From: Euprymna scolopes
Lineage: Eukaryota
Assembly (NCBI GenBank): GCA_053919585.1
Contig: CM132794.1
Direction: 5' to 3' (one strand)
Length of the DNA stretch: 64,000 nt
Shown here one piece after another: positions 4,049-60,770 of this stretch (the first letter of the stretch is position 1; every line of letters begins with the position of its first letter). The notes under the pieces are model-generated. The model was given only the letters and a program-made list of their open reading frames with translations, was not told the origin of the DNA and searched no databases. Both the position numbers and the translations under genes were made by a program.

Positions 4049-4340
4049 CTAATAAAAGCATGAAAGGGATATAATTGGGGATTTTATTGAAGGCAGACGA
4101 GTGCCGTACATTGTTATTACATATGTGTATATGGAAAAATTATGGATTACAATAGAAAAATGCGAGCATGTAAATATGGTTAAGCTTAAACATGAAAAAG
4201 TTGTTAAAACTGGAAAAGAAAAATACAAAATATCTTAAAATTAAAAATTGACAGAGTAGTTTGGTAGAGAAATGTACACACGTAGACACACACAGACAAT
4301 TTGGGCGGTTGGGTTTCGATACTGGTTTGACGCAGTTGCC

Positions 4341-4396
4341 TGTCTAGCCACACTGATGAGCTGTTAAACAGCGAAACAGTACTGTATGTGGATGAC

Positions 4397-10355: not shown

Positions 10356-10739
10356 NNNNNNNNNNNNNNNNNNNNNNNNNNNNNNNNNNNNNNNNNNNNN
10401 NNNNNNNNNNNNNNNNNNNNNNNNNNNNNNNNNNNNNNNNNNNNNNNNNNNNNNNNNNNNNNNNNNNNNNNNNNNNNNNNNNNNNNNNNNNNNNNNNNNN
10501 NNNNNNNNNNNNNNNNNNNNNNNNNNNNNNNNNNNNNNNNNNNNNNNNNNNNNNNNNNNNNNNNNNNNNNNNNNNNNNNNNNNNNNNNNNNNNNNNNNNN
10601 NNNNNNNNNNNNNNNNNNNNNNNNNNNNNNNNNNNNNNNNNNNNNNNNNNNNNNNNNNNNNNNNNNNNNNNNNNNNNNNNNNNNNNNNNNNNNNNNNNNN
10701 NNNNNNNNNNNNNNNNNNNNNNNNNNNNNNNNNNNNNNN
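10356..10739. other. Assembly gap (others at about 14025-14156, 29705-29862, 32224-32508, 33996-34203)
   Basis: Runs of N. Confidence 1.
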
Positions 10740-24191: not shown

Positions 24192-24393
24192 GTCGCTTTT
24201 ATTCATTCCTTTTGGTCAAGATCAAAGTGTAGTATCTGTTCTTCAGATGCTGCACTTCATTTTCTTGTTCTCTTTCAGTGGAGGAGAAATCCTTCACGAC
24301 TGAGACAATTTTTATTTTTGTACCTTTTCTCCACGTTAAAAAACGACCCTGGTGTCTAACTCTGTCCCGTGGGGAGGCATAGTAAATAGGTAC
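24192..24393 (+). ncRNA. U2 snRNA-like module inside the Helitron
   Basis: TCGCTT..CCTTTTGG..AAGATCAAAGTGTAGTATCTGTTCTT (24218-24243) matches the U2 5' domain as I recall it, including the branch-point recognition sequence GTAGTA (24229-24234). Sm-like ATTTTTG at 24314-24320. Stem-loops downstream. The 3' boundary is inferred. Confidence 0.75.
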
Positions 24394-24529
24394 AATATAA
24401 TTGTTTATAATTGTACTATTCAGAAATATTATTTATAGTTCGTCCATTTCAGTTAGTATACATTTCCTTTACGCTTAATTAATTTACAATCATTAATATC
24501 GTTAAACAATTCCGTTTAAAACCGAAATT

Positions 24530-27500
24530 ATGCCACCCAAACGAAGTAGAAACGAAAGTGAGGAAGAAAGAATGGAAAGATTGGAAGCTAATAGACTAAG
24601 AGTTGCTGCAATTCGCTCCAATGAAAACAATTCAGATAGAGAAAGACGTCTAGAACTTAACAGGATACGTCAAAGAGAAAGGAGAGCAAGACTGTCAGAT
24701 TTGGAAAGAGAAACCCAACATGAAGCTGACAGAACTAGACATGCTGTAAGGCGGTTAAATTCATCACAAGATGAAATTCAAGAAAGGCAAAGATATGCAC
24801 TGGAAAGAGAAGCAATATTACGATCGAATGAATTATATGAGGTAAGTAGACGTACACAAGGTCAGTTGAGAGTGGCTCAACGACATCAGAATGAATCGGA
24901 AACCCAACGAAGCTTTCGCCTATACCAAGGGCAACAACGAGAGGCTGCATGGAGAGAGAGTATGACTTTGCCCCAGCAATTGACAGAAAACGAGGCAGCT
25001 AGACAACGAATGACTGCTTTGAGACACCATGAAATAGAACACTGCAATAGAAAAGGATTGCTCTACAACAAAAATGACTCTCTCACTACAGCTGATATAG
25101 GAAAAATGGACAAAGTATGTCAACATTGCTCAGCTGTAAAATTTAAAGGAGAACCCCCTGGTTGTTGTTGTTGTTCTTCTGGCAAAGTTGTGCTTGATAG
25201 CTTTCCACCACTGCCTCAGTTGCTTCAAGATTTGCTCTCCGGCAATGGTCCCATCTCTAAAGATTTTCTGCAAAATCTATGCAGTTATAACAATTGTTTT
25301 GCAATGACATCATTTGGTCACAAAATTGCGGCAGTACATGGGTGGAATCCTTCTTTTAGAATTCGAGGCCAGGTTTGCCACCAGATTGGGAGTCTTTTAC
25401 CACCTGAAGATGAAACAGCAAAGTTTATTCAAGTCTACTTCTTGGATAGTCTGGAAGAGGAACTACATAATCGGGGACGTGACAGTAGACTCAATAGAGA
25501 CATTCTCCAAAGTCTGACTGAATTTTTACATGAGAACAACAGCTTTATTTGTCAGCTGAAAACAACAAAGGAGAGGATTGAAGAAGAACACTTGGTAGAA
25601 CATAAAGTTGTCATAAGGGAAGACCGAAGGCCGCAAGAAGAGCATCCACGGCGATTCAATGCTCCAACAACAACGTATGAGATTGGAATATTAATGGAGA
25701 ATGAACCAACAGCTAACCGGGATATTGTCTTGCGTTTTAGAAATGATACATTAAAATGGATCTCCGAACTACATCCCCTCTACGATACTTTAATGTACCC
25801 GTTAATGTACCCCTATGGTTCTCCATCTTACAACATCTACATGAAGGCATCCAATGGGCGAAAAGTTACCCAACAGCAATTTTATTCGTACCATTTAATG
25901 ACTCGGCCTGGAAACTATTTTCTCTGGTACCGAAGGCTATTTCAACAATGGCTGGTGGATGTGTACTGCAAGATTGAAACAGAACGTTTACAGTTCCTGA
26001 GGCGTGAGCAACAGACCCTGAGAGCTGACAATTATAGCAACTTGAGAGATTCAATTCTTAGGGAGGATGGGAATCCAGAACAGTTTGGTCAACGAGTTGT
26101 ACTTCCGGCAACTTATACAGGAGGCCCTCGATACATGTTTGAGCGTCAAAGTGATGCCATGGCATATGTTCGGCGAATGGGCCGAGCCGACCTCTTCATC
26201 ACGTTCACAACAAATCCAAAGTGGACAGAAATTACAGAAAATTGTCTTCAAGGGCAAGACCCTCAGGATCGTCCAGATATTGTTGCCAGGGTTTTCAGGC
26301 AGAAGCTAAAAAAGTTACTTGAATTTATTAAAAAGGGAGGATTTGGCAGGTTGAGGGCTTTCCTGTACAGTATTGAATATCAAAAAAGAGGACTGCCGCA
26401 TGCACACATCCTCACCTGGCAGGCCCCAGAGGACAAACTTCTACCAGAAAAAATGGATCTCTGCATATCTGCAGAGATCCCTGACAAAGAGGAAGATCCT
26501 GATCTTCATGCTAAAGTGATGGCACATATGGTGCATGGACCTTGTGGACCATTTAATCCAAATTGTCCATGTATGATTGACAACAAATGTTCCAAAAAAT
26601 ACCCAAAAGAATTTCTTCAGTGTACCAAGCAAGGCCAAGACTCTTACCCCAAGTACAGGCGAAGAAAACCAGAAGATGGAGGCCAGACTGGTACAATAAG
26701 GATGAAGAGAAATGGTCGGTATGTTAATCAAGAAATAACAAACCAGTGGATTGTTCCGTACAACAAGGTCCTCCTTCAGCAGTTCAACGCTCACATTAAC
26801 GTAGAAATTTGCAGCTCGATCCAAAGCATCAAATATGTCCTCAAATACGTGAATAAAGGATGTGATCAAGCAGTGTTTGAACTACAAAGAACTGATGGAG
26901 CAGCTAACCAACAAGGCCAAGTACAAAGTCACATTGTGGATGAGATCCAGCAGTTCCAGAATGCAAGGTATGTCGGCAGTTCAGAGGCAGCCTGGAGGAT
27001 ATTGGAACATCCCATCCATGAACATTTCCCCCCAATTGTACAACTTTCTGTTCATCTTGAAAATGGGCAGCGTGTCATGTTCTCAGCTGATACTGCTCTG
27101 GAACGAGCCCAAGGTCCACCGCCTGCCGCAACTTTGACAGCATTTTTTCAACTCTGCCATGAGGATGACTTTGCAAGGGGTCTCAAATACGTAGAAGTCC
27201 CTGAGTTTTACACTTGGAACAAATCGACAAAGAAATGGATGAGAAGAATGCGTGGGGTACAAGTTGAAGGTACTGAAAATGATGATGTATGGAAGGCACC
27301 ATGCATTGGGAGAATCTACACGATTAGTCCAAAAGCAGGGGAGTGTTATTTCTTACGCCTGTTGCTCAATGAGGTTGCTGGTCCAACTTCATTTCAAAAT
27401 TTGCGAGCATACAATGGTCAGGTGTTTGAAACATACAGAGCAGCGTGCCTTGCTCGAGGCCTTCTAGAAAATGACCATCACTTGCATCAAGCAGTAGGAG

Positions 27501-27868
27501 AGGCAAGTGCCACTCAATCACCTTCAAATTTGCGAAGCCTATTTGTGATAATTTTAACAGCCTGTGAGCCAAGAAATCCTCTTGAGATCTGGATGGCTTT
27601 TCGTGATGTAATATCTGAAGACATTCTTCACAGATACAGGCAAGAAGTTAACAATCCAGAAGCAGATTTTAATGAGGACATCTACAATAAAACTCTTTGT
27701 CTAATTGAAGAAAAAGTTCTCCTTATGTGCGGTCAACCATTGGCAAGCTATGGATTACCTGCACCAATGCAAGGGAGAGATGAAAGACTCGCGAGAGAGT
27801 ATCAACGTGAAGTTACTTATAATCTTGAAGAACTTCCCTACAAGCAGAAAATATGCAAGAAAAACTGA
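24530..27868 (+). CDS. Helitron RepHel, N-terminal part (STPR-like repeats, Zn finger, HUH Y2 Rep domain)
   Basis: 1112-aa ORF with CQHC..CCCC, DLFITFTTNPKW, EYQKRGLPHAHIL (HUH) and KYVLKYVNKG (two Tyr). Confidence 0.95.
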   Translation: MPPKRSRNESEEERMERLEANRLRVAAIRSNENNSDRERRLELNRIRQRERRARLSDLERETQHEADRTRHAVRRLNSSQDEIQERQRYALEREAILRSNELYEVSRRTQGQLRVAQRHQNESETQRSFRLYQGQQREAAWRESMTLPQQLTENEAARQRMTALRHHEIEHCNRKGLLYNKNDSLTTADIGKMDKVCQHCSAVKFKGEPPGCCCCSSGKVVLDSFPPLPQLLQDLLSGNGPISKDFLQNLCSYNNCFAMTSFGHKIAAVHGWNPSFRIRGQVCHQIGSLLPPEDETAKFIQVYFLDSLEEELHNRGRDSRLNRDILQSLTEFLHENNSFICQLKTTKERIEEEHLVEHKVVIREDRRPQEEHPRRFNAPTTTYEIGILMENEPTANRDIVLRFRNDTLKWISELHPLYDTLMYPLMYPYGSPSYNIYMKASNGRKVTQQQFYSYHLMTRPGNYFLWYRRLFQQWLVDVYCKIETERLQFLRREQQTLRADNYSNLRDSILREDGNPEQFGQRVVLPATYTGGPRYMFERQSDAMAYVRRMGRADLFITFTTNPKWTEITENCLQGQDPQDRPDIVARVFRQKLKKLLEFIKKGGFGRLRAFLYSIEYQKRGLPHAHILTWQAPEDKLLPEKMDLCISAEIPDKEEDPDLHAKVMAHMVHGPCGPFNPNCPCMIDNKCSKKYPKEFLQCTKQGQDSYPKYRRRKPEDGGQTGTIRMKRNGRYVNQEITNQWIVPYNKVLLQQFNAHINVEICSSIQSIKYVLKYVNKGCDQAVFELQRTDGAANQQGQVQSHIVDEIQQFQNARYVGSSEAAWRILEHPIHEHFPPIVQLSVHLENGQRVMFSADTALERAQGPPPAATLTAFFQLCHEDDFARGLKYVEVPEFYTWNKSTKKWMRRMRGVQVEGTENDDVWKAPCIGRIYTISPKAGECYFLRLLLNEVAGPTSFQNLRAYNGQVFETYRAACLARGLLENDHHLHQAVGEASATQSPSNLRSLFVIILTACEPRNPLEIWMAFRDVISEDILHRYRQEVNNPEADFNEDIYNKTLCLIEEKVLLMCGQPLASYGLPAPMQGRDERLAREYQREVTYNLEELPYKQKICKKN

Positions 27869-29244
27869 CCGATTCTCAAAGAGAAGTTTACAATTCATTC
27901 ATGGCAATGTTGGAAGCACAAGGTGAAATGAACAAAAACATGATGTTTCTTGATGCTCCAGGTGGTACGGGCAAGACTTTTGTAATCAATTTGATCCTTG
28001 CAAAGATTAGATCCATGAGAAAGATTGTGCTTGCAACAGCATCCAGTGGCATTGCTGCTACTCTACTACAAGGTGGCCGCACTCTTCACAGCACTTTTAA
28101 AGTACCCTTGGATACTCATCGAATGGATCAGCCAGTTTGCAAAATTACTGGTAACTCAGCCTTGGCAAATGTAATTAGAGACACCTCTGCAATCATTGTA
28201 GACGAAGCCCCAATGACGCACAAGAGTGCTTATGAAGCAATTGACCGAACACTGCAAGACATCACAGGAAACAAGAATCCCATGGGTGGCATTCCAACCT
28301 TATTTTGCGGTGATTTCCGTCAAATCCTCCCAGTGGTTAAAAATGGCACAAGGGCTAACATTGTCAATGCAAGTTTGAAACAATCCTATCTCTGGAGGCA
28401 CGTTATAGTGAAGAGACTGACTACTAATATGAGAGCCTATATCTCTGATAACACAGCTGCAGCAGACGTCTCAAAATTGCTTCTCCAAATCGGTAATGGT
28501 CAGTTTCCTATCACTTCTTCACCTGACACAATTAAGATTCCAACTGCGCTTGGTAAATGTGTCGGTAATCAGAAGCAACTGAAAGACAAAGTGTACCCAG
28601 ACCTGCAAAACAATGGAAAATCACCGGATTGGCTTGCTGAGAGGGCTATTATTTCGCCATTAAACAGCAATGTGAATCATTTGAACAATTCAATAATGGA
28701 TGAATTTCCAGGAGACACAAAGCAATACAAGTCAGTTGATTCAGCTACTAATGAATATGAAGCTGTTCACTACCCTGTGGAGTTTTTAAACTCTTTGGAG
28801 ATATCTGGAATGCCTCCACACATTTTAAATCTCAAAATTGGATCGCCAATCATGATTCTTCGATCCTTGGAACCGCCAAAAACAACAAACGGAACCAGAT
28901 GTGTTATCACCAGATTGCACACCAATGTACTTGAGGCCACCATTTCCTGTGGTCCCTACAAAGGCGAAACCGTTCTACTGCCAAGGATCCCCTTAGTTCC
29001 ATCGGACTCAGTACTTCCATTTAAATTCCGGAGACTCCAATTTCCTGTGAAGGTGTGTTTTGCAATGAGCATAAACAAAAGTCAAGGTCAGACATTTAAC
29101 ACCATTGGCGTAGACTTGACATCAGACTGCTTCAGTCACGGTATGTTCTACGTCTCCATCAGCCGGACAGGAAGTTCAGAAAAACTCTACATTCTGGCTC
29201 CAAATCAAAGCAGCAGAAATGTAGTTTACCCTGAGGCTCTTTAG
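27853..29244 (+). CDS. Helitron RepHel, Pif1-family SF1B helicase part (separated from Rep by one frameshift)
   Basis: DAPGGTGKT (Walker A), IIVDEAPM, GDFRQILPV, AMSINKSQGQT, GMFYVSISR. Confidence 0.95.
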   Translation: MQEKLTDSQREVYNSFMAMLEAQGEMNKNMMFLDAPGGTGKTFVINLILAKIRSMRKIVLATASSGIAATLLQGGRTLHSTFKVPLDTHRMDQPVCKITGNSALANVIRDTSAIIVDEAPMTHKSAYEAIDRTLQDITGNKNPMGGIPTLFCGDFRQILPVVKNGTRANIVNASLKQSYLWRHVIVKRLTTNMRAYISDNTAAADVSKLLLQIGNGQFPITSSPDTIKIPTALGKCVGNQKQLKDKVYPDLQNNGKSPDWLAERAIISPLNSNVNHLNNSIMDEFPGDTKQYKSVDSATNEYEAVHYPVEFLNSLEISGMPPHILNLKIGSPIMILRSLEPPKTTNGTRCVITRLHTNVLEATISCGPYKGETVLLPRIPLVPSDSVLPFKFRRLQFPVKVCFAMSINKSQGQTFNTIGVDLTSDCFSHGMFYVSISRTGSSEKLYILAPNQSSRNVVYPEAL

Positions 29245-29872: not shown

Positions 29873-31002
29873 TTTTGAAAATAATAAGCCGAAGTTTCTC
29901 AAGAGCTCTTTCGGCTATTATCTCATCAGGAGAAAATCGATAGCGTACAAAATAATATTATGTCGAAAAAAAAACGTTCTAATGGGGAACTTATTGAATG
30001 TGCCAAAAGTACGGGGGCACTAAAATAAATTTATTAACGTTTAAAAAACGACTAAAATATTGGCACAACGAGGGGAAAGAAAAAAAACGGGAGAAAAGAT
30101 TCAAAGTTCCCCAAAGAGAAACAATGCGTTGGATGTTTCCTTTTGCCGGCACAAAGAAGGTTGACGCACCGCAATAGAGACAGACTCCAAAATCTTTAAA
30201 TGGTTTCTGGAGTCCGCTCTATGTAGCACCTCCAACCATTCTATTTTATATGTATTGGCACAGCACGGGTTGTGAACCAAATGCTGGCCAATAGCCAGCA
30301 TCGCACTAGCATTTAAATTGATATACAATATTGCTATTTTGGATGTAAGGCAAACTATCCTTGCGAAAAGACGGAAAAGCAGGTCTCGTAGTATATACCA
30401 AACGCAAGGACACAGAATAAAAGCAGTCGTAAATACTTCTGCGAACCTGTCTTTTCCCCAATCCACGGTAATTTTAAATAAACCGGGCATTTCAAGGGTC
30501 CAAACATATTAGGGGATTTAAAATCCGCAACCTTTTTGAAAATACAGTCATCAATAAGGTCAACAGGATAACCATTATTGATGAATATTTCCCTGATCTT
30601 ATCGAGTTCGGCGTCTAATCTGTTAGGCGAACAAATCATGAGGGCTCTATGTACCAAAGTATTAATTAGGCCGACCTTACGTGATTTTGGTACAAAAGAC
30701 AACCAGTTCACATATTGGCCAGTAAATGTCGGCTTTCTATAAATTGTAGTGAGAAAGCCCCCCCCCTTGTGCGTTCGACAAGAACATCTAAGAAGGGAAG
30801 CGTTCGACAAGGACATTAAGAATGGAAGCGAATTTAAAAGAGGTGCTACATAGAGCGGACTCCAGAAACCATTTAAAGATTTTGGAGTCTGTCTCTGTAC
30901 TTTTGGCACATTCAATAAGTTCCCCATTAGAACTTTATTTTCGACATAATATTATGAGATCATAGCCGAAAGAGCTCTTGAGAACCGTCCGCTTATTATT
31001 TT

Positions 31003-33547: not shown

Positions 33548-34203
33548 CGCGATGGATAGGAACTCTGAATCTCCTGACTGCATTCACTGCAATTACTGCC
33601 TTCAGTAGTTGTTGTTGTCTCACCACGTTTTGGCCAAGTAAACCTCTGGCCGGCTTTGGGCAGGATTGAAACCGCTATCTTCAGACAATTATCACCTGGA
33701 ACCGTAGAGATTCGACGTCTCTATAAACTGCACCACGGGCCCCGAAGGGCGAACAAGGTTGAATTTTTTGGTCGTATAAACTCATGTTTATTATTTGATC
33801 TTCCATGGCCGTTTTTGTAAATGTATTTATTAAAGAGTGTATTGATTTTAGTCAATATAATTTAGATTTAGAAACAATTCATTTTAAAATATTGTCGAAA
33901 TTGTTTACATTGTTTACATAAGAAACATTAGAGTATTAAGCAACTTAATCTTTACTGATCGGACGATCTTATTTTTTAAATATGGGTAAAGGTCANNNNN
34001 NNNNNNNNNNNNNNNNNNNNNNNNNNNNNNNNNNNNNNNNNNNNNNNNNNNNNNNNNNNNNNNNNNNNNNNNNNNNNNNNNNNNNNNNNNNNNNNNNNNN
34101 NNNNNNNNNNNNNNNNNNNNNNNNNNNNNNNNNNNNNNNNNNNNNNNNNNNNNNNNNNNNNNNNNNNNNNNNNNNNNNNNNNNNNNNNNNNNNNNNNNNN
34201 NNN

Positions 34204-35855
34204 CCGGGTGTTAGGAGGTGTATGTTGAGCAAAAAAAAAGCGGTTAATTTTTTAAACTTTGACCCCTATTATGACCACTTAAAATTTATTGTTTTCGGCT
34301 CCAATTAAGTTATTAAGTTAGATCCATATCCAAGGAACCTATATCTAAAATTTCAAGTGTTTAGACCCCAAATTGTCGGAGAAGTTTAGTAGAGTTCTAA
34401 AAGGTTAAATCGTTGAAGTTTAACCCCTTAACAGCCAAATTTCTAGCCGAAAACCGATCACACAGATTTTCCCAAATCTCAGTAACTTGTATATCAAATT
34501 TCGAGTCTGCAAACTTAAAATTTACAGAGTTATTTTGTTGGGAAATGGACTAGGACACACACACAGACACACAGACACACAGAAACACAGACACAAAGAC
34601 ACGTTCACGTTTATAGATATACTAGCAATGGATGCTCGGCGTTGCCCGGGTGTTTGGAGGTGTATGCTGAGCCCAAAAAAGGTCAATTTTTTCAACTTTG
34701 ACCCCTATTATGACCCCTTCACATTTATTGTTTTGGGCTCAAATCAGGTTATTAAGTTAGATCCATGTCCAAGGAACCTATATCTAAAATTTCAAGTGTT
34801 TAGACCCCAAATTCTCGGAGGAGTTAGGTAGAGTTCTCAAAGGTCAAATCGTTGACCTTTGACCCTACAATCGCCAAATTTCTGGTTGAAAACCGATGAC
34901 ATCGATTTTCCCAAATTTCAGTACCCTGTATATCAAATTTCAAGTCTGTAGACTTAAAATTGACAGAGTTATTGCGTAGGGAAATGTACACACACAGACA
35001 CACAAATACACAGATACACGCACAGACAGACGGACAGACCCTTTCACTTTTATAGATAGACAGACTAGTATTCTAGACCGGAGTTGCCCGGGTGTTTGGA
35101 TGTGTGTGTTTAGCAAAAAAAAAAAAAAAAAGTAGTAGTAGGAAGGCAGGTTCGAACCCGTACCGTGAACGAGAAAAAACAGGGAAAATAATATTAGGTC
35201 TTTGCTGTTACGACTACCGCCAAACCGGAGGTGACTTATGTTTTAATTAAGGCTAGACAATCGAAAGGAGAGGATAACTTTCAAAAATATCGGCGACAAA
35301 AGCAACTCCCCCTGTGGAAAACTGCCCAGTTGAAGGCGAAAATATAAAGGTTTTTAGCTAAGTTTTCGATATTTGTCGTCTGAAAGGTCGACTTCAAAAC
35401 GATACTGATCTTGTAAAGATCCGTCGCCTCTGTCGAAAGTTTTAGGCAGACGTGTAAACATACATACATACATACATACATGCATTTATATATCGGTAAC
35501 TAAAAACTTTCGACCAAAACCGATTAAAGAGATTGTCCTATCTTTGAATACCCTTCATGTAAAATTTTAATTTAGACCAGAAATTCGGTAAAAACCGCTG
35601 AGGTCAAATTTCTCTAAACTTTGACCCTTATTATAGCCTCTTAAAATTTATTGTTTTGGGCTTAAATCAAATTATTAAGTTAGATCTATGTCCAAGGGAC
35701 CTATATCTAAAATCTCAAGTGTTTAGACTCCAAATTGGCGGAGGAGTTTGGTAGAGTTCTCCAGGGTAAAATCGTATAACTGTGACCCCTTAACAGACAA
35801 ATTTCTGGCCGAAACCGATCACAAAGATTTTCCCAAATCTCAGTACCCTGTATAT
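34204..35855 (-). mobile_element. Head-to-tail array of three non-autonomous Helitron copies
   Basis: Minus-strand 3' ends (CCGGGCAACGCCGAG-type hairpin plus CTAG) at 34622-34625 and 35065-35068 sit next to the TCTAT 5' ends of neighbouring copies. Same family as 7967-8767. The third copy is truncated. Confidence 0.8.
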
Positions 35856-35860
35856 AAAAA

Positions 35861-37520
35861 CCCGGCCCCTCACCTGTTGGGCTGAGTGTCAAGTGACGAA
35901 TCCTTGACTGGTACTACCCTGTCTCCCTGCAGCCGAGGCCGCTAGGAGACACATCCCATCATAAGAAGCTTATAATGGGGTATATATTTAATTGCCGCCC
36001 ACATCGGCAATATTTGGCACAAGGCCTGGAAAGTGGGATACCCGCAGGCTCCCCTAAAGAAGGGGCACTCCTGCAATTTTAAAAATTGCCTGAGTAACTC
36101 CGTCGGCATTCCCCGGTCGGGGCGCCTCAGGCAGCAAGCAATAAACTTGCCCCACCGGAAAGCCCGGTGGCATGGCCTGGGAGGGTGGACCTCCTAGGTA
36201 TTACCCAGGCGGTGTACCTCAATCCAACAGGTGCTGGGCCGGTTCCTGGCCCCTCACCTGTTGGGCTGAGTGTCAAGTGACGAATCCTTGACTGGTACTA
36301 CCCTGTCTCCCTGCAGCCAAGGCCGCTAGGAGACACATCCCATCATCTCAAGAGTGATAATGGGGTAGATATTTATTTGCTGCCCACCTCAGCAAAATGT
36401 GGCACAAGGCCTGGAAAGTGGGATACCCGCAGGCTCCCTTAAAGGAGGGGCACTCCTGCAATTTTAAAAATTGCCTGAGTAAACCCCATCGGCATTCCCC
36501 GGTCGGGGCGCCTCAGGCAGCAAGCAATAAACTTGCCCCACCGGAAAGCCCGGTGGCATGGCCTGGGAGGGTGGACCTCCTAGGTATTACCCAGGCGGTG
36601 TACCTCAGTCCAACAGGTGCTGGGCCGGTTCCCGGCCCCTCACCTGTTGGGCTGAGTGTCAAGTGACGAATCCTTGACATGTACTACCCTGTCTCCCTGC
36701 AGCCGAGGCCGCTAGGAGACATCCCATCATCTCAAGAGTGATAATGGGGTATATATTTAATTACCGCCCACATCGGCAATATTTGGCACAAGGCCTGGAA
36801 AGTGGGATACCCGCAGGCTCCCCTAAAAGAGAGGCACTCCTGCAATTTTAAAAATTGCCTGAATAACCCCGTCGGCATTCCCCGGTCGGGGCGCCTCAGG
36901 CAGCAAGCAATAAACTTGCCCCACCGGAAAGCCCGGTGGCAAGGCCTGGGAGGGTGGACCTCCTAGGTATTACCCAGGCGGTGTACCTCAGTCCAACAGG
37001 TGCTGGGCCGGTTCCCGGCCCCTCACCTGTTGGGCTGAGTGTCAAGTGACGAATCCTTGACTGGTACTACCCTGTCTCCCTCCAGCCGAAGCCGCTAGGA
37101 GACACATCCCATCATCTCAAGAGAGGAATGGGGTATATATTTAATTGCCGCCCACATCGGAAATATTTGGCACAAGGCTTGGAAAGTGGGATACCCGCAG
37201 GCTCCCCTAAAGAAATGGCACTCCTGCAATTTTAAAAATTGCCTGAGTAACCTCGTCGGCATTCCCCGGTCGGGGCGCCTCAGACAGCAAGCAATAAACT
37301 TGCCCCACCGGAAAGCCCGGTGGCAAGGCCTTGGAGGGTGGACCTCCTAGGTATTACCCAGGCGGTGTACTTCAGTCCAACAGGTGCTGGGCCGGTTCCC
37401 GGCCCCTCACCTGTTGGGCTGAGTGTCAAGTGACGAATCCTTGACTGGTACTACACAGTCTCCCTGCAGCCGAAGCCGCTAGGAGACACATCCCATCATC
37501 TCAAGAGAGGAATGGGGTAT
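35861..37520 (+). repeat. GC-rich tandem repeat, ~384-bp unit, 4.3 copies, highly structured (candidate retrozyme-like RNA)
   Basis: GGCCCCTCACC recurs at 35864, 36248, 36634, 37017 and 37401. About ten hairpins per unit. The repeat itself is certain; the RNA interpretation is inference. Confidence 0.95.
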
Positions 37521-37899
37521 GATCCCACACAGTCGGATGATTCTATTTATAAACGATGCTGCTAAGAACTGACGAATCAAATGAATTCACGTTCTGCTAC
37601 CAACCAATCAGAAACCAGAATTGCTTCATAAATATTAAACCTTTTCTGGAGCAATTTCACATGTTCTTTTTCCGGGTTTCGACACGGTAAGAATATTTTG
37701 TTCTGTGGAACTGTCTACTACAAACAAGTCACCTCCCAGGACTTGTGTGTAACAGCGAACCACCTGAAACTGTTCTGAAACTCATAATGGCTTACACTTC
37801 TAGACTATGTGTGTAAGAAACTATTTATATTATGGCGGAAGATGGCTATAAAAATGAACCATAGCGAAAAAGGAAGCAGTAGTCATTTTCATCCAATCC

Positions 37900-38594
37900 C
37901 GAGAACAGTCGGGTCTTCATGCTAGTTTAAATATTTTTTCTGATAAATCTTACAAGAAAGCAATATAATACATCACAAGTGTAGCATGTCAAGTATTTTC
38001 TCTCGTTAAACAATTAAATTCACTAAATATAGGATGCAGCAGAAATATCTCCCACATTTTGACATGCGAGATTCCCAGCTCCTGCAGTTTCTGGGCAATC
38101 ATTAATTTGTGCGAATAAAACTGCTTATCAGTGTGTAGAATTCTTCTGGCTGTTTGATCAGACAATCCTAAGGCCAAAGTCTGTTTGCGAGCTGAACGTA
38201 TAAGAGACTGAGTAAAAGAAAGTCTAACAATTCAAATACTGTCTGGCGTTTGGGTGCTTCCAGGCCTTCCAGGTAGATTTTTTTAAGTGTCGAACCTGTA
38301 GCTCTGAAATTTGCAACCCATAGCTGTATTCTATATGAAAGAGCATCATTCCGTCCTAACTTGTAATGAACTTGGAAAACTGTCTCTGTTGCAGTTACAG
38401 AGTCACCCTTTTTTTTAACATTTTTTACAGTAAAGGAACGATGTGCCCCAGTGCAAATCATATTGCTTGATGAGGATACCTGAAAAAAATGGCCAGTTAT
38501 TAGCTAAATTAAAACATCATTGGCACTTTCATGAGTTCATTAGCAACGTATAGTTAAAAGTGTAAAATGCGCGAAGGATTTCTGCCGCCCTCTG
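37900..38594 (-). mobile_element. Decayed Tc1/mariner-superfamily element (DUF4817-like HTH N-terminus)
   Basis: TGAHRSFTV..GDSVTATE..IQLWVANFRATGST and ALGLSDQTARRILH..KLMIAQKL. TA|CAGAGGGCGGCAGAA terminus at 38594. Left boundary not determined. Confidence 0.7.
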
Positions 38595-45014: not shown

Positions 45015-46892
45015 GATATGTAACGGGAAGATATTTAAACGCATTAAATATATCATGTATTATTTATGTCACTGTGACATCAAACACCACTCAAAAGCAT
45101 ATGAGTCATACTTGAGTTCAAAATAGCGAGTTCTGAACTCAACGTCATGTATAATGACTTATCGTAAATCATTGCTGGAAACTTAAATCCGTATCAGGAG
45201 GGCACTCCCAGATCGGGGAAATACCCCATTGGAAATATAACTGTGGAGTATTACGTACCACAGTATCCGTTTCTTCAAAGAAATCGATCAAGCGCTAAGA
45301 AAAGAGTTATCATACTTTCAGTTATCATACTGAAATTTACTTACAGTCCAAGAATGGACTATCAGTTTTGATTTTGGGAAATTTATTTCTGTGTTTTATT
45401 GAAGAAAAAATGAAAAGTAATAATCTGTACATGGTTCACCTGAAACCGTTCAGATTAAGAGACGATAGATTTTAATGTTTTGTTCTTCATTCATATTTCA
45501 CTCCTTCCACTACGTCTCGTCCTCTTCGTGCTTCACCATGCTCGAACCTACAGATAAATGAAAAACACGAGCAGACACAAATAGACACAGAGACACATCT
45601 TTATCGTTATTGATGTACGTTTTATAAATGTGTTGTTATAATTGCAGAGACCGGTAACCTGAATGATAAGTCTTATAACCAAGACAGTAAACTCAACCAA
45701 AAATACGAAAATGGAATAAAACAGGGAACAAATGCAGATAAACAGAGTAAAATACAGATTGTATTTATTGCACCAAATGTAGAAAAAAATAATGAAGAGG
45801 AACCGGTGCGAAGAGTTCCGTAATGTCTGACTATGGTCCGTGAAGCGAGGTGCAGTCGGCAATGACGAGGACGGCGTCAGGCATCAAAACCAAGGGAAAA
45901 GGTCCTTAACGATCTGCTAGCACCAGCTTCCTTCCCATCACAACAATATGTGACACAAGGTTGGAAGATGGAGAGAATCGAACCAGCGAACTTAATTAAA
46001 GAGTAATCTGGCGTATTACAATTGTCTGAGCAGCCCGTTGGCCTTCCACAATCGGTTCGCCTCGAGCAGTTAGCAATAAACTAACTTCTCCAAAGAGTGG
46101 AGGTTTGGATTGGGAAAGTGGAAGCCATAGGATCAATACTTACAGATAAAAAGTCAAAAGTGGCAATTGCCTTGTTTGGGGGTGAAAATGTAATTTTTTT
46201 AAAAGTTCAAATCAAGGTATAATCAGGTTTTTAAATATTTTCGATCATATCAATAAACTTCTTCCCTAAAAGGGAAACATAAATCCATGACAGTACTCTG
46301 ATCATAGATCAGATAATAATACGCCCCCCCCCTCCCCGAACGGAGATTTATCCACAGACACTCAAAATGCGATTTCAAATTATTAATACATAGTAATGGC
46401 TTACGGAAGGAGAGTATGCTTCCTAGGTAGATTAAATAAAGGATTCTGTTCGAAAAGGCTTATGATGAAAATAACATTGAAGATGAGAACAGTAGTCCGA
46501 AGAATCTAAATAATACGAATAATTAATCTTCGTCTCAAAAATTCAGAAACGTAATATTTTGATAAGAATTTCAATTAAATGAAAGAATTTTTCAAAACTA
46601 GGGATGAGCTTCACATGATCAATTGATATTTTGCTACTTACACAACTTACATTGGCTGATGAAAGTAAATAGATAATGTCAACAGTATAAATTATACAGA
46701 GACAATACTTAATAATTTAAATAAATAGAATTAATAACATCTATTACTAATGAAACCGATACTATAATATTACTTCAATAAATGTATTATTGCACCATTT
46801 TTCAATGCTAAATTTGTGAGGGTAGAGTAGTATCACCTTTATTTTTATGACACTACCCTCCCAAACAAAATCTCTTTTTTAGAGTAACGTAG

Positions 46893-47155: not shown

Positions 47156-49990
47156 CAAGGTGCTCACCATTTATCAAGGCCCGGAAGCCACTCGGGGATA
47201 AGGGTTATTTGCGTGTGCAGTACGTTAGTGTTGAGATTTGATAGAGTGTCTTACTTAAGGGGCGGTTCATCAGGAATTTGTTTATGTTGGACTTGAAGAC
47301 ATCCAGGTTGTAGTAAAGTGGGAAACAGGCAAACAGAACAGAGCTCCACAGGCGTTCATTTCCTAGAAAGAAGCTTTATTCATGGAATCTACGTTTTGGT
47401 TTTGGCACAGACAAAGAGTAGGGAAAATTACTTACAGAGGTTTCAGTTAGACGGGTGTATTTAGTGAAAGATTGGCGCGGGGTGACCAGAGATTGGAGCT
47501 CAGACGAGCACTTGCCATGGAAGTAACGATAAAACAAAGACAGGCTTGCAACGTCTCTCCTGTGGGAGAGAGGTTGCAGGGAAGAGAAAAGGGCATCCCC
47601 CACTAAGCCACGAAGCCTATTTTGTACTCTGTCAAGGCAGGATATGTTGTTTTTAGCAGCTCCTGCCCAGATGTGGCAGCAGTACTTCATCCTTGGACGT
47701 ACTTGGCTTTTATATAGATAGAGAATTGCATCAGCAGTGCGATATCCTCTGGGGCGGTAGAAGGATCCAACCATTTTTACAGCGACCTTGGCAACAGACT
47801 TGATGTACATGTTCCATTTCTGGTCAGGAGTAAAGGTCAAGCCCAGAAGTTTATTAAAACATGGGGGTTCTCTAGATGAGAGCAATCCATTTCAGTTGAT
47901 GCCAAATGGTGGATCAGAGCGTTGATGATGTAAAGATAGGAGCTTGGTTTTAGATGCATTAAAGGTAACCAATCACCTCTTCCCCCACTGTACCACGCGC
48001 TCGAGATCAGAGGAGAGAGAATCAGAGAGAACTTTGTCATTTACGGCCTTTGATGTGTTGCCATAGATGGTCGTGCCATCAGCATAGATGTCAACGAATG
48101 ATTTTAGTATGTGTTTTGGGAGATCATTGATGTAGATCAGGAAGAGAGTTGGGCCCAGAATGGACTCCTGAGGGACTCCAGCATTAATACTGAGGGCCAC
48201 TGATTTCTTCCAATCAACCACTACTCTTATGAGCCTATCAAAGAGAAATGATTTAATGATTGAGGAAACATTTCCAGTTATACCGTAGCTGGAAATCTTG
48301 TTAAGTAGGCCCTAATGCCATACCTTATCGAAGGCTTTTGATATGTCAAGAACAATTGCCCTAGAAAGGAAGCCTTTGCCAACAGATTCACTAATCCTAT
48401 GAGATATAGCCGTTAGAACATTTGCTGTAGATCTAGCAGAATGGAAACCATTACATGTCACTAAGAAGGTTATTTCTACGAGGTGGTTGACTACTTCTCT
48501 ATTTAATATGGATTCCAGCAACTTATTCATGGCACACAGAAGACTTCGGTCTGTACTGAGAGGGAGATGACTTATCACCTGAATTCTTACATACAGGTCA
48601 TGCTGATGAGGTTTTCCAGGGTGTTGGGAAGCACTTCTCCTTAAAGCAACGCTTAAACAGTTTTGTAAGTATGGGGGCAAGTTCTGGTTGAAGCTTTTTC
48701 ATCATATAATTGGAATGCCGTCAGGGCCAGTTGCTTTACTGGAATCAAGGTTCTTGATCAGATTGGCGACCTCACGCACATATATTTATATGTCGCATAG
48801 CGTGTTGTTTGTTATAGGGGAAAATACGGGTAGTTGATGGCCTTCGTCGCATGGGGTAGAATTAGTTGCAAAGTTCTTGGCAAATAGTTTGGCCTTGTCT
48901 GATGCTGACACGATGACCTTAGGTCCATTGATGATGGTTGGGATAGAACACACGCTTCTGTTTAGGATCCTGTTTGCTATTTGCCAGAACTGGTGGGGAC
49001 CAAGCCGTTGCTTAGCTACTTTGGATTTAACGGACTGAGCATATAGCTCTCTTGCATTTTTTATTACTCTTTTACAGTGGTTGCTGGCAGTCCTGAAAGC
49101 AGCTTTAGTCTCAGTACATCTATTACGTTGGTAGCTATGGAAAAAGTGATTTCTGTGCGCGATGGACGCAGCACATTCTCGGGAGAACCATGGCTGGCTG
49201 TTAGGTTTTTGTTGAAATATTTTGGATGGAATGAATCGGTCTATGCCTACAGTTAACGATTCGGTCAGGTCTGATACTATGGAGGACACATCCTTTTTAA
49301 ACATGGAATTCTGGGGTAAATCAGATATAAATGTACGGAAGCTATCCCAGTCAGTCGTAGAGTATCGATATACAGTACGTTGGAGAGGTACGTCTGAAGA
49401 CTTATTGCATTTCGTTTTTATCTTAACTGATATAACCGAGTGGTCGGAAGATCCCAGAGGAGACAGAACGGAACATGAACATAGCTCAGGTGAAGTTGTG
49501 AGAAAAAGGTCTAGAAAACTAACGTACTGACCGGAAGTATCGTGCACACGGGTGAACAATTTGGGTGAGGTCATAGGCAATGGCAAAATCATGACAGAAC
49601 CTCCCCATATCATCTGATTTGTTCGAATGGGTCAGCCATTCCACATTGTGGATATTGAAATCACGACAAATATGGATGTTAGCTGAAGGATGAGCAGACA
49701 GGATGTGGTCAATTTTCTCAGATATGCTCTTAAAGAGAGCAACTCCGCTGTTGTGGGGGCTATAGAGGACAAATATAAATACGGTGGTGTAAGCAAGTGC
49801 AACCCTTAAGCACATATAAGATAAATTAGAGTCTTCACTGGGGATATCCCTACTACACGAAAAGTCATCTTTAATGTAGGCACATATTCCATGCCCATGG
49901 CAATCTTGGGGGTCAGATTTAGATGTTAAGTTAGAGTATCCATTAATTATGAACTCGTCTAGGGAAGTGGTCGGCCCTATGCTAGTTCAT
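47151..49990 (-). mobile_element. CR1-clade LINE ORF2 pseudogene (APE endonuclease and reverse transcriptase), 5'-truncated
   Basis: DFNIHNVEWL, LDLFLT, GSSDH (APE); LDISKAFDKVWH, GVPQESILGPTLFLIYINDL, YADG (RT); LSHRRDVASLSLFYRY tail. Many frameshifts. Confidence 0.92.
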
Positions 49991-56890: not shown

Positions 56891-59800
56891 TTAATTTATG
56901 AGGGTGATATCTGATCAACATTTTATTTATGAGGATGATATCTGATCAACATTTTATTTATGAGGATGATATCTGATAAACATTTTATTTATGAGGATGA
57001 TATCTGATAAACATTTTATTTATGAGGATGATATCTGATAAACATTTTATTTATGAGGATGATATCTGATAAACATTTAATTTATGAGGATGATATCTGA
57101 TCAACATTTTATTTATGAGGATGATATCTGATAAACATTTAATTTATGAGGATGATATCTGATAAACATTTAATTTATGAGGGTGATATCTGATCAACAT
57201 TTAATTTATGAGGATGATATCTGATAAACATTTAATTTATGAGGATGATATCTGATAAACATTTTATTTATGAGGGTGATATCTGATCAACATTTTATTT
57301 ATGAGGATGATATCTGATAAACATTTTATTTATGAGGGTGATATCTGATCAATATTTTATTTATGAGGATGATATCTGATCAACATTTTATTTATGAGGA
57401 TGATATCTGATAAACATTTTATTTATGAGGATGATATCTGATCAACATTTTATTTATGAGGGTGATATCTGATAAACATTTTATTTATGAGGATGATATC
57501 TGATCAACATTTTATTTATGAGGATGATATCTGATCAACATTTTATTTATGAGGATGATATCTGATCAACATTTTATTTATGAGGATGATATCTGATAAA
57601 CATTTAATTTATGAGGATGATATCTGATAAACATTTTATTTATGAGGATGATATCTGATCAACATTTTATTTATGAGGATGATATCTGATAAACATTTTA
57701 TTTATGAGGATGATATCTGATAAACATTTTATTTATGAGGATGATATCTGATAAACATTTTATTTATGAGGATGATATCTGATCAACATTTTATTTATGA
57801 GGATGATATCTGATAAACATTTTATTTATGAGGATGATATCTGATAAACATTTTATTTATGAGGATGATATCTGATAAACATTTTATTTATGAGGGTGAT
57901 ATCTGATCAACATTTTATTTATGAGGATGATATCTGATCAACATTTTATTTATGAGGATGATATCTGATAAACATTTTATTTATGAGGGTGATATCTGAT
58001 AAACATTTTATTTATGAGGATGATATCTGATAAACATTTTATTTATGAGGATGATATCTGATCAACATTTTATTTATGAGGATGATATCTGATAAACATT
58101 TTATTTATGAGGATGATATCTGATAAACATTTTATTTATGAGGATGATATCTGATCAACATTTTATTTATGAGGATGATATCTGATCAACATTTTATTTA
58201 TGAGGATGATATCTGATAAACATTTAATTTATGAGGATGATATCTGATCAACATTTAATTTATGAGGATGATATCTGATAAACATTTTATTTATGAGGAT
58301 GATATCTGATAAACATTTTATTTATGAGGATGATATCTGATCAACATTTTATTTATGAGGATGATATCTGATCAACATTTAATTTATGAGGATGATATCT
58401 GATCAACATTTTATTTATGAGGATGATATCTGATAAACATTTTATTTATGAGGATGATATCTGATAAACATTTTATTTATGAGGATGATATCTGATCAAC
58501 ATTTAATTTATGAGGATGATATCTGATCAACATTTTATTTATGAGGATGATATCTGATCAACATTTTATTTATGTGGATGATATCTGATCAACATTTTAT
58601 TTATGAGGATGATATCTGATCAACATTTAATTTATGAGGATGATATCTGATAAACATTTTATTTATGAGGATGATATCTGATCAACATTTTATTTATGAG
58701 GATGATATCTGATAAACATTTTATTTATGAGGATGATATCTGATCAACATTTTATTTATGAGGATGATATCTGATCAACATTTAATTTATGAGGATGATA
58801 TCTGATAAACATTTTATTTATGAGGATGATATCTGATAAACATTTAATTTATGAGGATGATATCTGATAATCATTTAATTTATGAGGATGATATCTGATC
58901 AACATTTAATTTATGAGGATGATATCTGATCAACATTTTATTTATGAGGATGATATCTGATAAACATTTTATTTATGAGGATGATATCTGATCAACATTT
59001 TATGTATGAGGATGATATCTGATAAACATTTTATTTATGAGGATGATATCTGATAAACATTTTATTTATGAGGATGATATCTGATCAACATTTTATTTAT
59101 GAGGATGATATCTGATAAACATTTAATTTATGAGGATGATATCTGATAAACATTTTATTTATGAGGATGATATCTGATCAACATTTTATTTATGAGGATG
59201 ATATCTGATAAACATTTTATTTATGAGGATGATATCTGATAAACATTTTATTTATGAGGATGATATCTGATCAACATTTTATTTATGAGGATGATATCTG
59301 ATAAACATTTTATTTATGAGGATGATATCTGATAAACATTTAATTTATGAGGATGATATCTGATCAACATTTAATTTATGAGGATGATATCTGATCAACA
59401 TTTAATTTATGAGGATGATATCTGATAAACATTTTATTTATGAGGATGATATCTGATAAACATTTAATTTATGAGGATGATATCTGATCAACATTTAATT
59501 TATGAGGATGATATCTGATAAACATTTTATTTATGAGGATGATATCTGATAAACATTTTATTTATGAGGATGATATCTGATAAACATTTTATTTATGAGG
59601 ATGATATCTGATCAACATTTTATTTATGAGGATGATATCTGATAAACATTTTATTTATGAGGATGATATCTGATAAACATTTTATTTATGAGGATGATAT
59701 CTGATCAACATTTTATTTATGAGGATGATATCTGATAAACATTTTATTTATGAGGATGATATCTGATAGACATTTAATTTATGAGGATGATATCTGATCA

Positions 59801-60770
59801 ACATTTAATTTATGAGGATGATATCTGATCAACATTTTATTTATGAGGATGATATCTGATCAACATTTTATTTATGAGGATGATATCTGATAAACATTTT
59901 ATTTATGAGGATGATATCTGATCAACATTTTATTTATGAGGATGATATCTGATAAACATTTTATTTATGAGGATGATATCTGATAAACATTTTATTTATG
60001 AGGATGATATCTGATCAACATTTTATTTATGAGGATGATATCTGATCAACATTTTATTTATGAGGATGATATCTGATAAACATTTTATTTATGAGGATGA
60101 TATCTGATAAACATTTAATTTATGAGGATGATATCTGATAAACATTTTATTTATGAGGATGATATCTGATAAACATTTTATTTATGAGGATGATATCTGA
60201 TAAACATTTTATTTATGAGGATGATATCTGATAAACATTTTATTTATGAGGATGATATCTGATAAACATTTTATTTATGAGGATGATATCTGATAAACAT
60301 TTAATTTATGAGGATGATATCTGATAAACATTTTATTTATGAGGATGATATCTGATAAACATTTAATTTATGAGGATGATATCTGATAAACATTTTATTT
60401 ATGAGGATGATATCTGATCAACATTTTATTTATGAGGATGATATCTGATAAACATTTTATTTATGAGGATGATATCTGATAAACATTTTATTTATGAGGA
60501 TGATATCTGATAAACATTTTATTTATGAGGATGATATCTGATAAACATTTAATTTATGAGGATGATATCTGATAAACATTTTATTTATGAGGATGATATC
60601 TGATAAACATTTTATTTATGAGGATGATATCTGATAAACATTTTATTTATGAGGATGATATCTGATAAACATTTTATTTATGAGGATGATATCTGATAAA
60701 CATTTTATTTATGAGGATGATATCTGATAAACATTTTATTTATGAGGATGATATCTGATAAACATTTTAT
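56891..60770. repeat. 31-bp minisatellite, ~125 copies: TTATGAGG(A/G)TGATATCTGAT(A/C)AACATTT(T/A)AT
   Basis: Uninterrupted 31-bp period over 3880 bp with three recurrent variable sites. Confidence 0.98.

What the first reader, a model, noticed from the sequence alone, without database searches (positions are those of the whole stretch)
35861..37520. Tandem ~384-nt, fully foldable repeat: candidate circular-RNA/retrozyme-like replicon without a known ribozyme core
Seen: 4.3 head-to-tail GC-rich units in AT-rich DNA. Nearly every segment forms a hairpin, for example a ~23-bp rod at 36604-36656 spanning the unit junction, TGTCTCC/GGAGACA, CCCAT/ATGGG, GCCTGAG/CTCAGGC, GCAAG/CTTGC, CCACCGG/CCGGTGG and GCCTGGG/CCCAGGC. 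G-U pairs favour the + strand. The array begins at the apex of the rod and ends mid-unit, as expected for reverse transcription around a circle. Known: metazoan non-LTR retrozymes are tandem repeats of a few hundred nt that yield circRNAs and carry hammerheads. Here I find no CUGANGA/GAAA, HDV-like, twister or hairpin core on either strand. Inference: a viroid-like mobile RNA with an unrecognised processing motif, or an unknown ncRNA gene array.
Basis: partly seen in the sequence, partly recalled or inferred. Interest (0 to 1): 0.85.

Follow-up and report, generated by a model that had tools for sequence, protein, structure and literature searches.

The report
Hairpin-dense 384-bp tandem repeat family
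A 4.3-copy tandem array of a GC-rich, non-coding 384-bp unit folds into an exceptionally stable multi-hairpin structure and has a diverged second copy 8 kb away; it is laid out like ribozyme-bearing 'retrozymes' but has no known ribozyme, so circular RNA is still only a hypothesis.

Summary
The array is real: period 384, 4.3 copies, 94% matches, 56% GC against about 34% background. Each unit folds far better than shuffles on both strands (z -5 to -10 as RNA, -6.3 as ssDNA). Seven other stretches of the window give z -1.3 to +2.2. There is no conserved ORF, tRNA, Rfam family or CUGANGA hammerhead core. The same Rfam search did find a genuine minimal hammerhead elsewhere in the window.

New here: a diverged solo copy at 45915-46142 (array-only HMM, E 9e-16) with unrelated flanks. 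In it, 11 of 13 pairs changed on both sides still pair (null 0.40, p 0.0013). The family is therefore dispersed and its hairpins are maintained.

The units are related in a star-like way, which suggests one burst of amplification. The left end lies in the loop of the 25-nt-arm hairpin. No target-site duplication or flanking terminal inverted repeats were found, and no relative turned up in any collection searched.

Best reading: a lineage-specific non-autonomous structured repeat, retrozyme-like in layout. It fails retrozyme membership on the ribozyme and on GC content. Circular RNA and self-cleavage are untested.

The parts
35861..37520 (.). Tandem array: 4.3 head-to-tail units of about 384 bp, 56% GC, non-coding
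   Evidence: TRF; unit alignment A1; composition; no ORF conserved across units
35861..36244 (.). Unit 1 (384 bp); it begins at the last loop base of the junction hairpin, so it has only the right arm (35862-35886)
36245..36630 (.). Unit 2 (386 bp); carries a paired C>T / G>A change that keeps one hairpin intact; both changes are at CpG sites
36631..37013 (.). Unit 3 (383 bp)
37014..37397 (.). Unit 4 (384 bp)
37398..37520 (.). Partial unit 5 (123 bp), 97.6% identical to unit 4; the array ends at GGGGTAT, the start of the unit's AT-rich TATATAT stretch
36604..36656 (.). Junction hairpin ('rod'): 25-nt arms, 22/25 complementary, 3-nt loop TTC. It recurs at 36218-36270, 36987-37039 and 37372-37423
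36134..36150 (.). Hairpin GCAAG / loop CAATAAA / CTTGC, one per unit. The loop is identical in the solo copy while two stem pairs covary. The loop contains AATAAA on the + strand
45915..46142 (+). Diverged solo copy ('copyB') matching about unit positions 130-340. It includes GTTAG/CAATAAA/CTAAC at 46069-46085 and CTCCA/AAGAG/TGGAG at 46088-46102. Weaker similarity may extend upstream to about 45823
   Evidence: blastn E 2e-6; nhmmer with an array-only model, E 8.7e-16, aligned 45928-46131 within envelope 45915-46142; pair counts
35598..35860 (+). Left flank: third copy of an unrelated ~440-bp tandem repeat (34195-35860), cut off by the array after ...CCCTGTATAT

Best explanation
The array is a short tandem block of a lineage-specific, non-coding, interspersed repeat. 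The element probably spreads through a compactly folded single-stranded form, about ten local hairpins closed by a long junction hairpin. My preferred mechanism has three steps. (1) A unit or multimer is transcribed. (2) It is copied by a reverse transcriptase supplied in trans; LINE- and Penelope-like fragments lie in the window. The copying runs round a circular or multimeric template in one event and gives several near-identical head-to-tail units. (3) The copy then decays in place. In layout it works like a non-LTR retrozyme or SINE, but it is not a retrozyme by definition. Shown: the array, its exceptional fold, the lack of coding capacity and of known RNA families, a second diverged copy with compensatory hairpin changes, and star-like unit relationships. 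Inferred: that the folded form is RNA rather than ssDNA, that copying was rolling-circle reverse transcription, and which strand is used. No self-cleavage is assumed.
For: Dispersed family: copyB, E 8.7e-16 with a model built from the array alone, with unrelated flanks. Structure maintained over roughly 40% divergence: 11 of 13 pairs changed on both sides still pair, against a null of 0.40 (p 0.0013), using a structure predicted from the array alone. One loop (CAATAAA) is identical while its stem covaries. Fold z about -8 against -1.3 to +2.2 for local controls. One-burst origin: 37 of 42 variable columns are singletons and pairwise identity is a uniform 93-95%. CpG o/e is 0.48 against 0.84 for the window. 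About 3% change per unit cannot have halved CpG, so the depletion predates the array and belongs to the family. The array interrupts another repeat at a sharp junction. RT-encoding elements and a hammerhead element are present in the same window. Metazoan retrozymes are 150-450-bp tandem repeats expressed as highly self-paired circRNAs (PMC7229834) and are linked to Penelope-like elements (bioRxiv 10.64898/2026.07.22.740005).
Against: There is no ribozyme, poly(A) tail, target-site duplication or Pol III boxes. The hairpins are nearly perfect Watson-Crick palindromes, equally stable on both strands and as ssDNA, with no strand bias in wobbles. That pattern is what DNA-level palindromes would give. 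Unit 1 differs from the others by a cluster of changes that creates a new perfect palindrome, which is a template-switch signature (PMC8794818). The unit-2 'compensatory' pair is two CpG transitions. copyB as a whole folds no better than shuffles (z -0.9 and -1.8). GC of 56% is unlike metazoan retrozymes (<45-50%). Only two loci are available, and no relative exists in any collection searched.
Confidence: 0.42

Rival explanations
1. It is a purely DNA-level, transposon-derived satellite-like array. A palindrome-rich fragment of some mobile element was amplified by unequal exchange or by rolling-circle replication of extrachromosomal circular DNA. The hairpins are DNA palindromes, created and repaired by template switching during replication, and have no RNA function. 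The left boundary is a break at a palindrome centre.
For: The fold is strand-symmetric and significant as ssDNA. A clustered change in unit 1 creates a new palindrome. Template switching can produce compensatory-looking changes without selection (PMC8794818). The array starts exactly in the loop of the longest palindrome. The array is CpG-depleted like silenced repeats. Short satellite-like arrays and solo monomers scattered among Helitron/Helentron and MITE elements are common in invertebrate genomes (PMC7492417, PMC8268682, PMC3879986). The window is rich in transposable elements, including a Helitron.
Against: No parent element, flanking terminal inverted repeats, duplications or Helitron termini were found around either copy. 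Satellites rarely reach z about -8 through ten separate short hairpins. Loop sequences are conserved while stems covary, which looks more like constraint on a folded molecule. The star-like unit relationships argue against slow unequal exchange.
Confidence: 0.3
2. It is a retrozyme-like or viroid-like circular-RNA element. Multimeric transcripts would be cut to 384-nt monomers by an undescribed self-cleaving motif or by host nucleases, ligated into circles, and copied by rolling-circle reverse transcription.
For: It has the retrozyme layout and size and is highly self-paired. The family is dispersed with maintained hairpins. Viroids of one family have no ribozyme and are cut by co-opted host enzymes, so the lack of a ribozyme does not exclude circles (PMC8781251, abstract). 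The genome carries hammerhead elements and RT sources.
Against: No known core was found on either strand, although the search recovers a minimal hammerhead in the same window. A loose HDV-like descriptor gave only one weak minus-strand threading, in one of two units, without the G.U closing pair or a conserved P1.1. There is no matching sequence in the metagenome or viral collections. Each unit has AATAAA on + and T-runs on both strands, which would tend to stop multimeric transcripts. There is no transcript evidence at all.
Confidence: 0.12
3. It is a tandem array of genes for a lineage-specific structured small RNA, with one gene per unit. The unit has a TATATAT box, then a conserved block containing GGCACAAGG about 25-30 nt downstream, then either a T-run or the AATAAA hairpin. 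A hairpin-RNA or siRNA-precursor locus is a variant of this idea.
For: Each unit has a TATA-like box (35981-35987 in unit 1), a conserved unpaired block containing GGCACAAGG, a TTTT run (36077-36080) and AATAAA (36140-36145) in a consistent order. The part conserved in copyB starts near the TATA region and ends about 55 nt after AATAAA, followed by an A-rich stretch.
Against: No Rfam family matches. The whole unit is GC-rich and paired, with no gene-plus-spacer pattern. copyB lacks the TATA box and the T-run. The units carry about 6% mutual divergence including stem-breaking changes. The signals are short motifs expected by chance.
Confidence: 0.08
4. It is a head-to-tail array of a miniature inverted-repeat DNA transposon. 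The two arms of the junction hairpin would be the terminal inverted repeats of neighbouring elements, separated by a 3-bp target site.
For: The array begins almost exactly at the start of one arm. Adjacent arms are separated by 3 nt. Satellites derived from such elements are documented.
Against: No duplication flanks the array. The right end is mid-unit. copyB shows no significant arms or inverted termini. The first array base is a loop base, not an arm base.
Confidence: 0.06

Closest known systems
Metazoan non-LTR retrozymes (tandem repeats with type I hammerheads; PMC7229834, bioRxiv 10.64898/2026.07.22.740005)
   Same: Both are tandem arrays of a few-hundred-bp non-coding unit, from dimers upward, and are highly self-paired. 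Both occur as dispersed copies in invertebrate genomes that also carry Penelope-like or hammerhead elements. Both lack LTR, PBS and PPT.
   Different: This unit has no hammerhead or any other known self-cleaving core. Its GC is 56%, not <45-50%. No circRNA evidence exists.
Short satellite-like arrays and solo monomers carried by non-autonomous Helentron/Helitron or MITE elements in invertebrates (PMC7492417, PMC8268682, PMC3879986)
   Same: Both are short arrays of a few units with scattered single monomers, sit among transposons and are non-coding.
   Different: No carrier element or termini were found around either copy. The self-complementarity is extreme (z about -8). k-mers of the unit are absent from the oyster satellitome supplement.
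Ribozyme-free viroids, the family processed by host enzymes (PMC8781251, PMC11210808)
   Same: The size falls in the 220-450 nt viroid range given in PMC8781251. It is non-coding, densely paired and has no ribozyme. From my own knowledge, not checked here: this viroid family is also GC-rich.
   Different: Viroids have no DNA template (PMC11210808, abstract), whereas this is chromosomal DNA in an apparently animal genome. From my own knowledge: those viroids infect plants and are rod-shaped, while this fold is branched.
Carnation small viroid-like RNA / newt satellite 2 type retro-copied hammerhead repeats (from my own knowledge and PMC7229834)
   Same: In both, a structured small RNA sequence is present as tandem DNA copies.
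   Different: Those all carry hammerheads.
Hairpin-RNA (endo-siRNA) loci built from tandem hairpin repeats (from my own knowledge of Drosophila hpRNA loci)
   Same: Both are tandem units that each form long perfect hairpins.
   Different: No target gene and no small-RNA data are available. Most hairpins here have stems of 5-10 bp, too short for Dicer products.

Membership tests
Non-LTR retrozyme | Tandem repeat with a unit of about 150-450 bp | tested here: met
   Period 384, 4.3 copies
Non-LTR retrozyme | A type I hammerhead ribozyme in each unit | tested here: not met
   No hammerhead at E<=10 and no CUGANGA on either strand. The same search finds a minimal hammerhead at 4348-4391.
Non-LTR retrozyme | Low GC content (<45-50%) | tested here: not met
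   GC 0.56; criterion from PMC7229834
Non-LTR retrozyme | Highly self-paired unit-length RNA | tested here: met
   About 65% of bases paired, z -5 to -10
Non-LTR retrozyme | Expressed as linear and circular monomer RNA | not testable with these tools
   No transcriptome of the source organism is available
Viroid / viroid-like cccRNA | Replicates RNA-to-RNA with no DNA template | tested here: not met
   The sequence is chromosomal DNA embedded in other repeats
Viroid / viroid-like cccRNA | Related circular RNAs present in environmental or viral sequence collections | tested here: not met
   The exact 22-mer scan gave 0 hits. The degenerate 18-base scan gave only chance hits.
HDV-like ribozyme | Nested double pseudoknot with a G.U closing pair in P1, a 2-bp P1.1 and a catalytic C in J4/2 | tested here: inconclusive
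   My own loose descriptor gave one minus-strand threading in one of two units. It has G-C rather than G.U, P1.1 is not conserved between units, and the P4 domain would be about 130 nt. The Rfam HDV families do not match.
SINE | Pol III head (tRNA, 7SL or 5S-derived) and an A-rich or microsatellite tail | tested here: not met
   No tRNA and no 7SL/5S/tRNA Rfam match. By eye there is only a box-B-like GGTTCCCGGCC, with 2 mismatches. The array has no tail.
Helitron (non-autonomous) | 5' TC and 3' CTRR termini, with a CTRR|TC junction in tandem copies, inserted between A and T | tested here: not met
   No CTRR-TC junction in the unit. The array begins CCCGG and ends GGGGTAT.
MITE / TIR DNA transposon | Terminal inverted repeats plus a target-site duplication | tested here: inconclusive
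   The 25-nt arms at the unit junction could be TIRs. No duplication flanks the array and copyB has no significant arms.
Satellite / TE-derived tandem repeat | Head-to-tail non-coding units with dispersed short arrays or monomers | tested here: met
Satellite / TE-derived tandem repeat | Identifiable parent element | tested here: not met
   The flanks of the two copies are unrelated. No other similarity exists in the window.

The most novel reading that the evidence does not exclude
A ribozyme-less or new-ribozyme counterpart of retrozymes: a GC-rich 384-nt multi-hairpin RNA that is cut to unit length by an undescribed self-cleaving motif or by host nucleases, circularised, and retro-copied round the circle into tandem DNA arrays in an animal genome.
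Probability: 0.12. Interest if true: 0.85.

Novelty: new variant of a known kind. Interest (0 to 1): 0.45.

Why it matters
All described animal and plant retrozyme-type tandem repeats are defined by a hammerhead. A dispersed family with the same layout, an even stronger fold and conserved hairpins but no known catalytic core has two possible meanings. It may be a concrete, cheap-to-test candidate for a new self-cleaving motif or for host-enzyme circRNA biogenesis. Or it may be a clean example of DNA-level palindrome maintenance by template switching that mimics RNA covariation. Either outcome helps people who mine genomes for structured RNAs. If it proves to be only a transposon-derived satellite, it is ordinary.

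Tried and rejected
- **Rfam.** At gathering thresholds on the whole window there were no hits. At E<=10 on 35000-38500 only chance miRNA/lncRNA hits appeared, caused by the hairpin.
- **Hammerhead core.** There is no exact match; the one-mismatch sites lack essential bases.
- **HDV-like fold.** My own descriptor gave one unconvincing minus-strand threading, which I rejected.
- **Hairpin-ribozyme loop B.** GUAUUAC by eye resembles it, but the opposing strand is missing and Rfam is silent.
- **tRNA/SINE head.** ARAGORN found none.
- **Coding potential.** No ORF is conserved across units. Exact look-ups of the 89-aa ORF and the helicase found nothing on record. A pseudo-protein search with a 54-aa ORF found no candidates.
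- **External relatives.** The exact 22-mer gave nothing in metagenome or viral contigs. A degenerate 18-base pattern gave 12, 2 and 8 hits in metagenome, viral and prokaryote collections; all match only the pattern itself. blastn against plasmids and phages gave nothing.
- **Literature k-mers.** Full-text search gave nothing, and the oyster satellitome supplement has none.
- **Helitron cargo.** The nearest relative of the window's Helitron (72% helicase identity, locus L023) has no such array.
- **Flanks.** The right flank is not a continuation of the 440-bp repeat. There is no target-site duplication at the array; only a non-significant 8-mer flanks copyB. No inverted repeats flank the array.
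- **Rod arms in copyB.** Not significant.
- **Internal sub-repeats.** Only one 10-mer recurs within the unit.
- **LTR-like reading.** The PBS- and PPT-like strings fail because the TATA and AATAAA signals are in the wrong order.
- **Source organism.** Not identified. The best Helitron match is 72%, and hits span nemertean, gastropod and hagfish.

Full report
**Observation**

Tandem Repeats Finder reports a single array at 35861-37520 with period 384, 4.3 copies and 94% matches. Anchoring on a conserved 20-mer gives unit spacings of 384, 386, 383 and 384. The units align cleanly. GC is 0.56 against 0.34 for the rest of the window. The junction 'rod' has 25-nt arms that are 88% complementary around a 3-nt loop, and it recurs at each unit junction. 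The array begins at the last loop base of a rod and ends mid-unit.

**Is the fold more than chance?**

Yes. Folded as circles, the four units give MFEs of -156 to -193 kcal/mol, z -4.9 to -9.7 against dinucleotide shuffles, with about 65% of bases paired. Seven other stretches of the same window (384-440 nt: another repeat, Helitron and LINE coding sequence, and GC-richer segments) give z between -1.3 and +2.2, while unit 3 gives -8.0 in the same test. With DNA parameters the z-score is -6.3. The structure is branched, about ten local hairpins closed by the rod, and is not a viroid-like rod.

**Strand**

- The minus strand has an equal or lower MFE in all four units.
- Wobble positions adjacent to helices shared by both strands number 19 for + and 28 for -.
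- In the solo copy the count is 9 against 5 on a +-derived structure, which is not significant.

The strand cannot be assigned.

**What it is not**

- No Rfam family reaches its gathering score anywhere in the window.
- No ribozyme reaches E<=10 in 35000-38500 on either strand.
- There is no exact CUGANGA and no tRNA.
- No ORF is conserved between units.

The whole-window E-value search recovered a textbook minimal type I hammerhead at 4348-4391 at 26.4 bits. It has helix I CCACA/UGUGG, the CUGAUGA core, a 5-bp helix II, GAAA, and a palindromic helix III CAGUACUG. The method therefore would have seen a hammerhead in the array. A loose HDV-like descriptor of my own gave one minus-strand threading, in only one of two units. 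It lacks the G.U closing pair, its P1.1 is not conserved, and its P4 domain would be about 130 nt. I do not credit it.

**A second copy**

blastn of the unit against the rest of the window found a collinear match near 46 kb. An HMM built from the array units alone scores it at E 8.7e-16. The alignment spans 45928-46131 within envelope 45915-46142. It is roughly 60% identical there (divergence 0.38-0.40), corresponding to about unit positions 130-340. The flanks of the two loci are unrelated. Two independent loci within 64 kb imply a dispersed, probably abundant family.

I predicted the structure from the array alone and read it on copyB inside the HMM envelope. Of 59 scorable pairs:
- 25 are unchanged;
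- 8 are changed on one side and still pair;
- 13 are changed on one side and are broken;
- 11 are changed on both sides and still pair;
- 2 are changed on both sides and are broken.

The null rate for pseudo-pairs changed on both sides is 0.40, which gives p = 0.0013. Examples:
- GCAAG/CTTGC becomes GTTAG/CTAAC, with the loop CAATAAA identical.
- CCACCGG/CCGGTGG becomes CTCCA/TGGAG.

copyB as a whole is no more stable than shuffles (z -0.9 and -1.8). That fits a copy that decayed after insertion, while the active lineages kept their hairpins.

**History of the array**

Of 42 variable columns among units 1-4, 37 are singletons, and pairwise identities are a uniform 93-95%. This star-like pattern points to one burst of amplification followed by independent decay. 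Only the partial unit 5 is closer to its neighbour (97.6%). CpG o/e is 0.48 in the array against 0.84 in the window. About 3% change per unit cannot have halved CpG, so the depletion belongs to the family and not to this locus.

Two caveats weaken the case for selection within the array.
- The unit-2 'compensatory' pair is two CpG transitions.
- Unit 1 differs by a tight cluster of changes that creates a new perfect palindrome. This is the signature of template switching, which can create and maintain hairpins without selection (PMC8794818).

**Boundaries**

The left flank is the third copy of an unrelated ~440-bp tandem repeat, cut off after ...CCCTGTATAT. The right flank is not its continuation. 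There is no target-site duplication and no inverted repeats flank the array. A start inside the loop of the longest palindrome fits two readings equally: 5' truncation of a rolling-circle cDNA at a strong hairpin, or a double-strand break at a cruciform tip.

**Context**

The window is transposon-rich.
- A Helitron Rep/PIF1 ORF pair lies at 24530-29244.
- LINE reverse-transcriptase fragments lie on the minus strand at about 47.4-49.6 kb. Pfam confirms RVT_1 only for 47973-48218; the rest rests on my reading of the ORFs.
- A Penelope-like ORF fragment lies at 30355-30927. This is my reading of the sequence; Pfam gave no hit.
- The hammerhead lies at 4.3 kb.

The closest Helitron relative in public data has 72% protein identity and carries no such array. 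The source species appears to be absent from the collections.

**External searches**

The following searches found no relatives:
- Exact and degenerate pattern scans of metagenome, viral and prokaryotic collections gave only chance matches to the pattern itself.
- A pseudo-protein search gave nothing.
- Plasmid and phage blastn gave nothing.
- Full-text k-mer searches and one satellitome supplement gave nothing.

**Interpretation**

The evidence establishes a lineage-specific, non-coding, dispersed repeat whose hairpin architecture is maintained, present here as a one-burst tandem array. I favour, at about 0.4, propagation through a folded single-stranded RNA copied by a trans-acting reverse transcriptase in rolling-circle or multimer fashion. 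That would make it retrozyme- or SINE-like in how it works. It is not a retrozyme by membership, because it fails on the hammerhead and on GC content (criteria from PMC7229834).

The main rival, at about 0.3, is a DNA-level transposon-derived satellite whose palindromes are made and kept by template switching. Such short arrays with scattered monomers are common in invertebrates (PMC7492417, PMC8268682, PMC3879986). I put it at about 0.12. It is directly testable with dimer transcription and RNase R assays.

Noticed in passing
window 4348-4391 (+): A complete minimal type I hammerhead. It has helix I CCACA/UGUGG, the CUGAUGA core, a 5-bp helix II, GAAA, and a palindromic helix III CAGUACUG. 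The predicted cut is after A4386. It scores 26.4 bits, below Rfam gathering. It sits just after a ~55-nt module plus (ACAC/AGAC)n tail (4244-4298) that is shared with the 440-bp repeat.
   Followed up: partly
window 34195-35860 (+); inverted copy about 7990-8606: A second tandem family with a period of about 440 bp in three copies. Each copy ends in an (ACAGACAC)n microsatellite and an A-run. Its third copy is the one interrupted by the 384-bp array. It has no hammerhead and no excess folding (z +0.4 and -1.3).
   Followed up: partly
window 24197-24421 (+): A U2 snRNA-like sequence, 34.8 bits against a gathering score of 46. The 5' half, including the branch-point-binding GUAGUA and the Sm site, is well conserved; the 3' stems are degenerate. 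It lies about 110 bp upstream of the Helitron ORF start.
   Followed up: partly
window 24530-29244 (+): An apparently intact Helitron coding region with two ORFs that overlap by 16 bases: 1112 aa with Helitron_like_N/Rep, and 463 aa with PIF1 helicase. The best public relative has only 72% identity.
   Followed up: partly
window 56894-60770: A 31-bp satellite of 125 copies at 96% identity, with a strong positive GC skew (0.2-0.37).
   Followed up: no
window 10356-10739: A run of N exactly 384 bases long, the same as the array period. I cannot tell whether the equal length means anything.
   Followed up: no
window 30176-30232 and 30840-30896: A perfect 57-nt inverted repeat that lies within or bounds the minus-strand ORFs at 30101-30927. 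Those ORFs look like a Penelope-like RT fragment by eye, but Pfam gave no hit.
   Followed up: no
window 35140-35160: A tRNA-like box B string (GGTTCGAACCC) in the filler between copies of the 440-bp repeat. It may be a SINE remnant.
   Followed up: no
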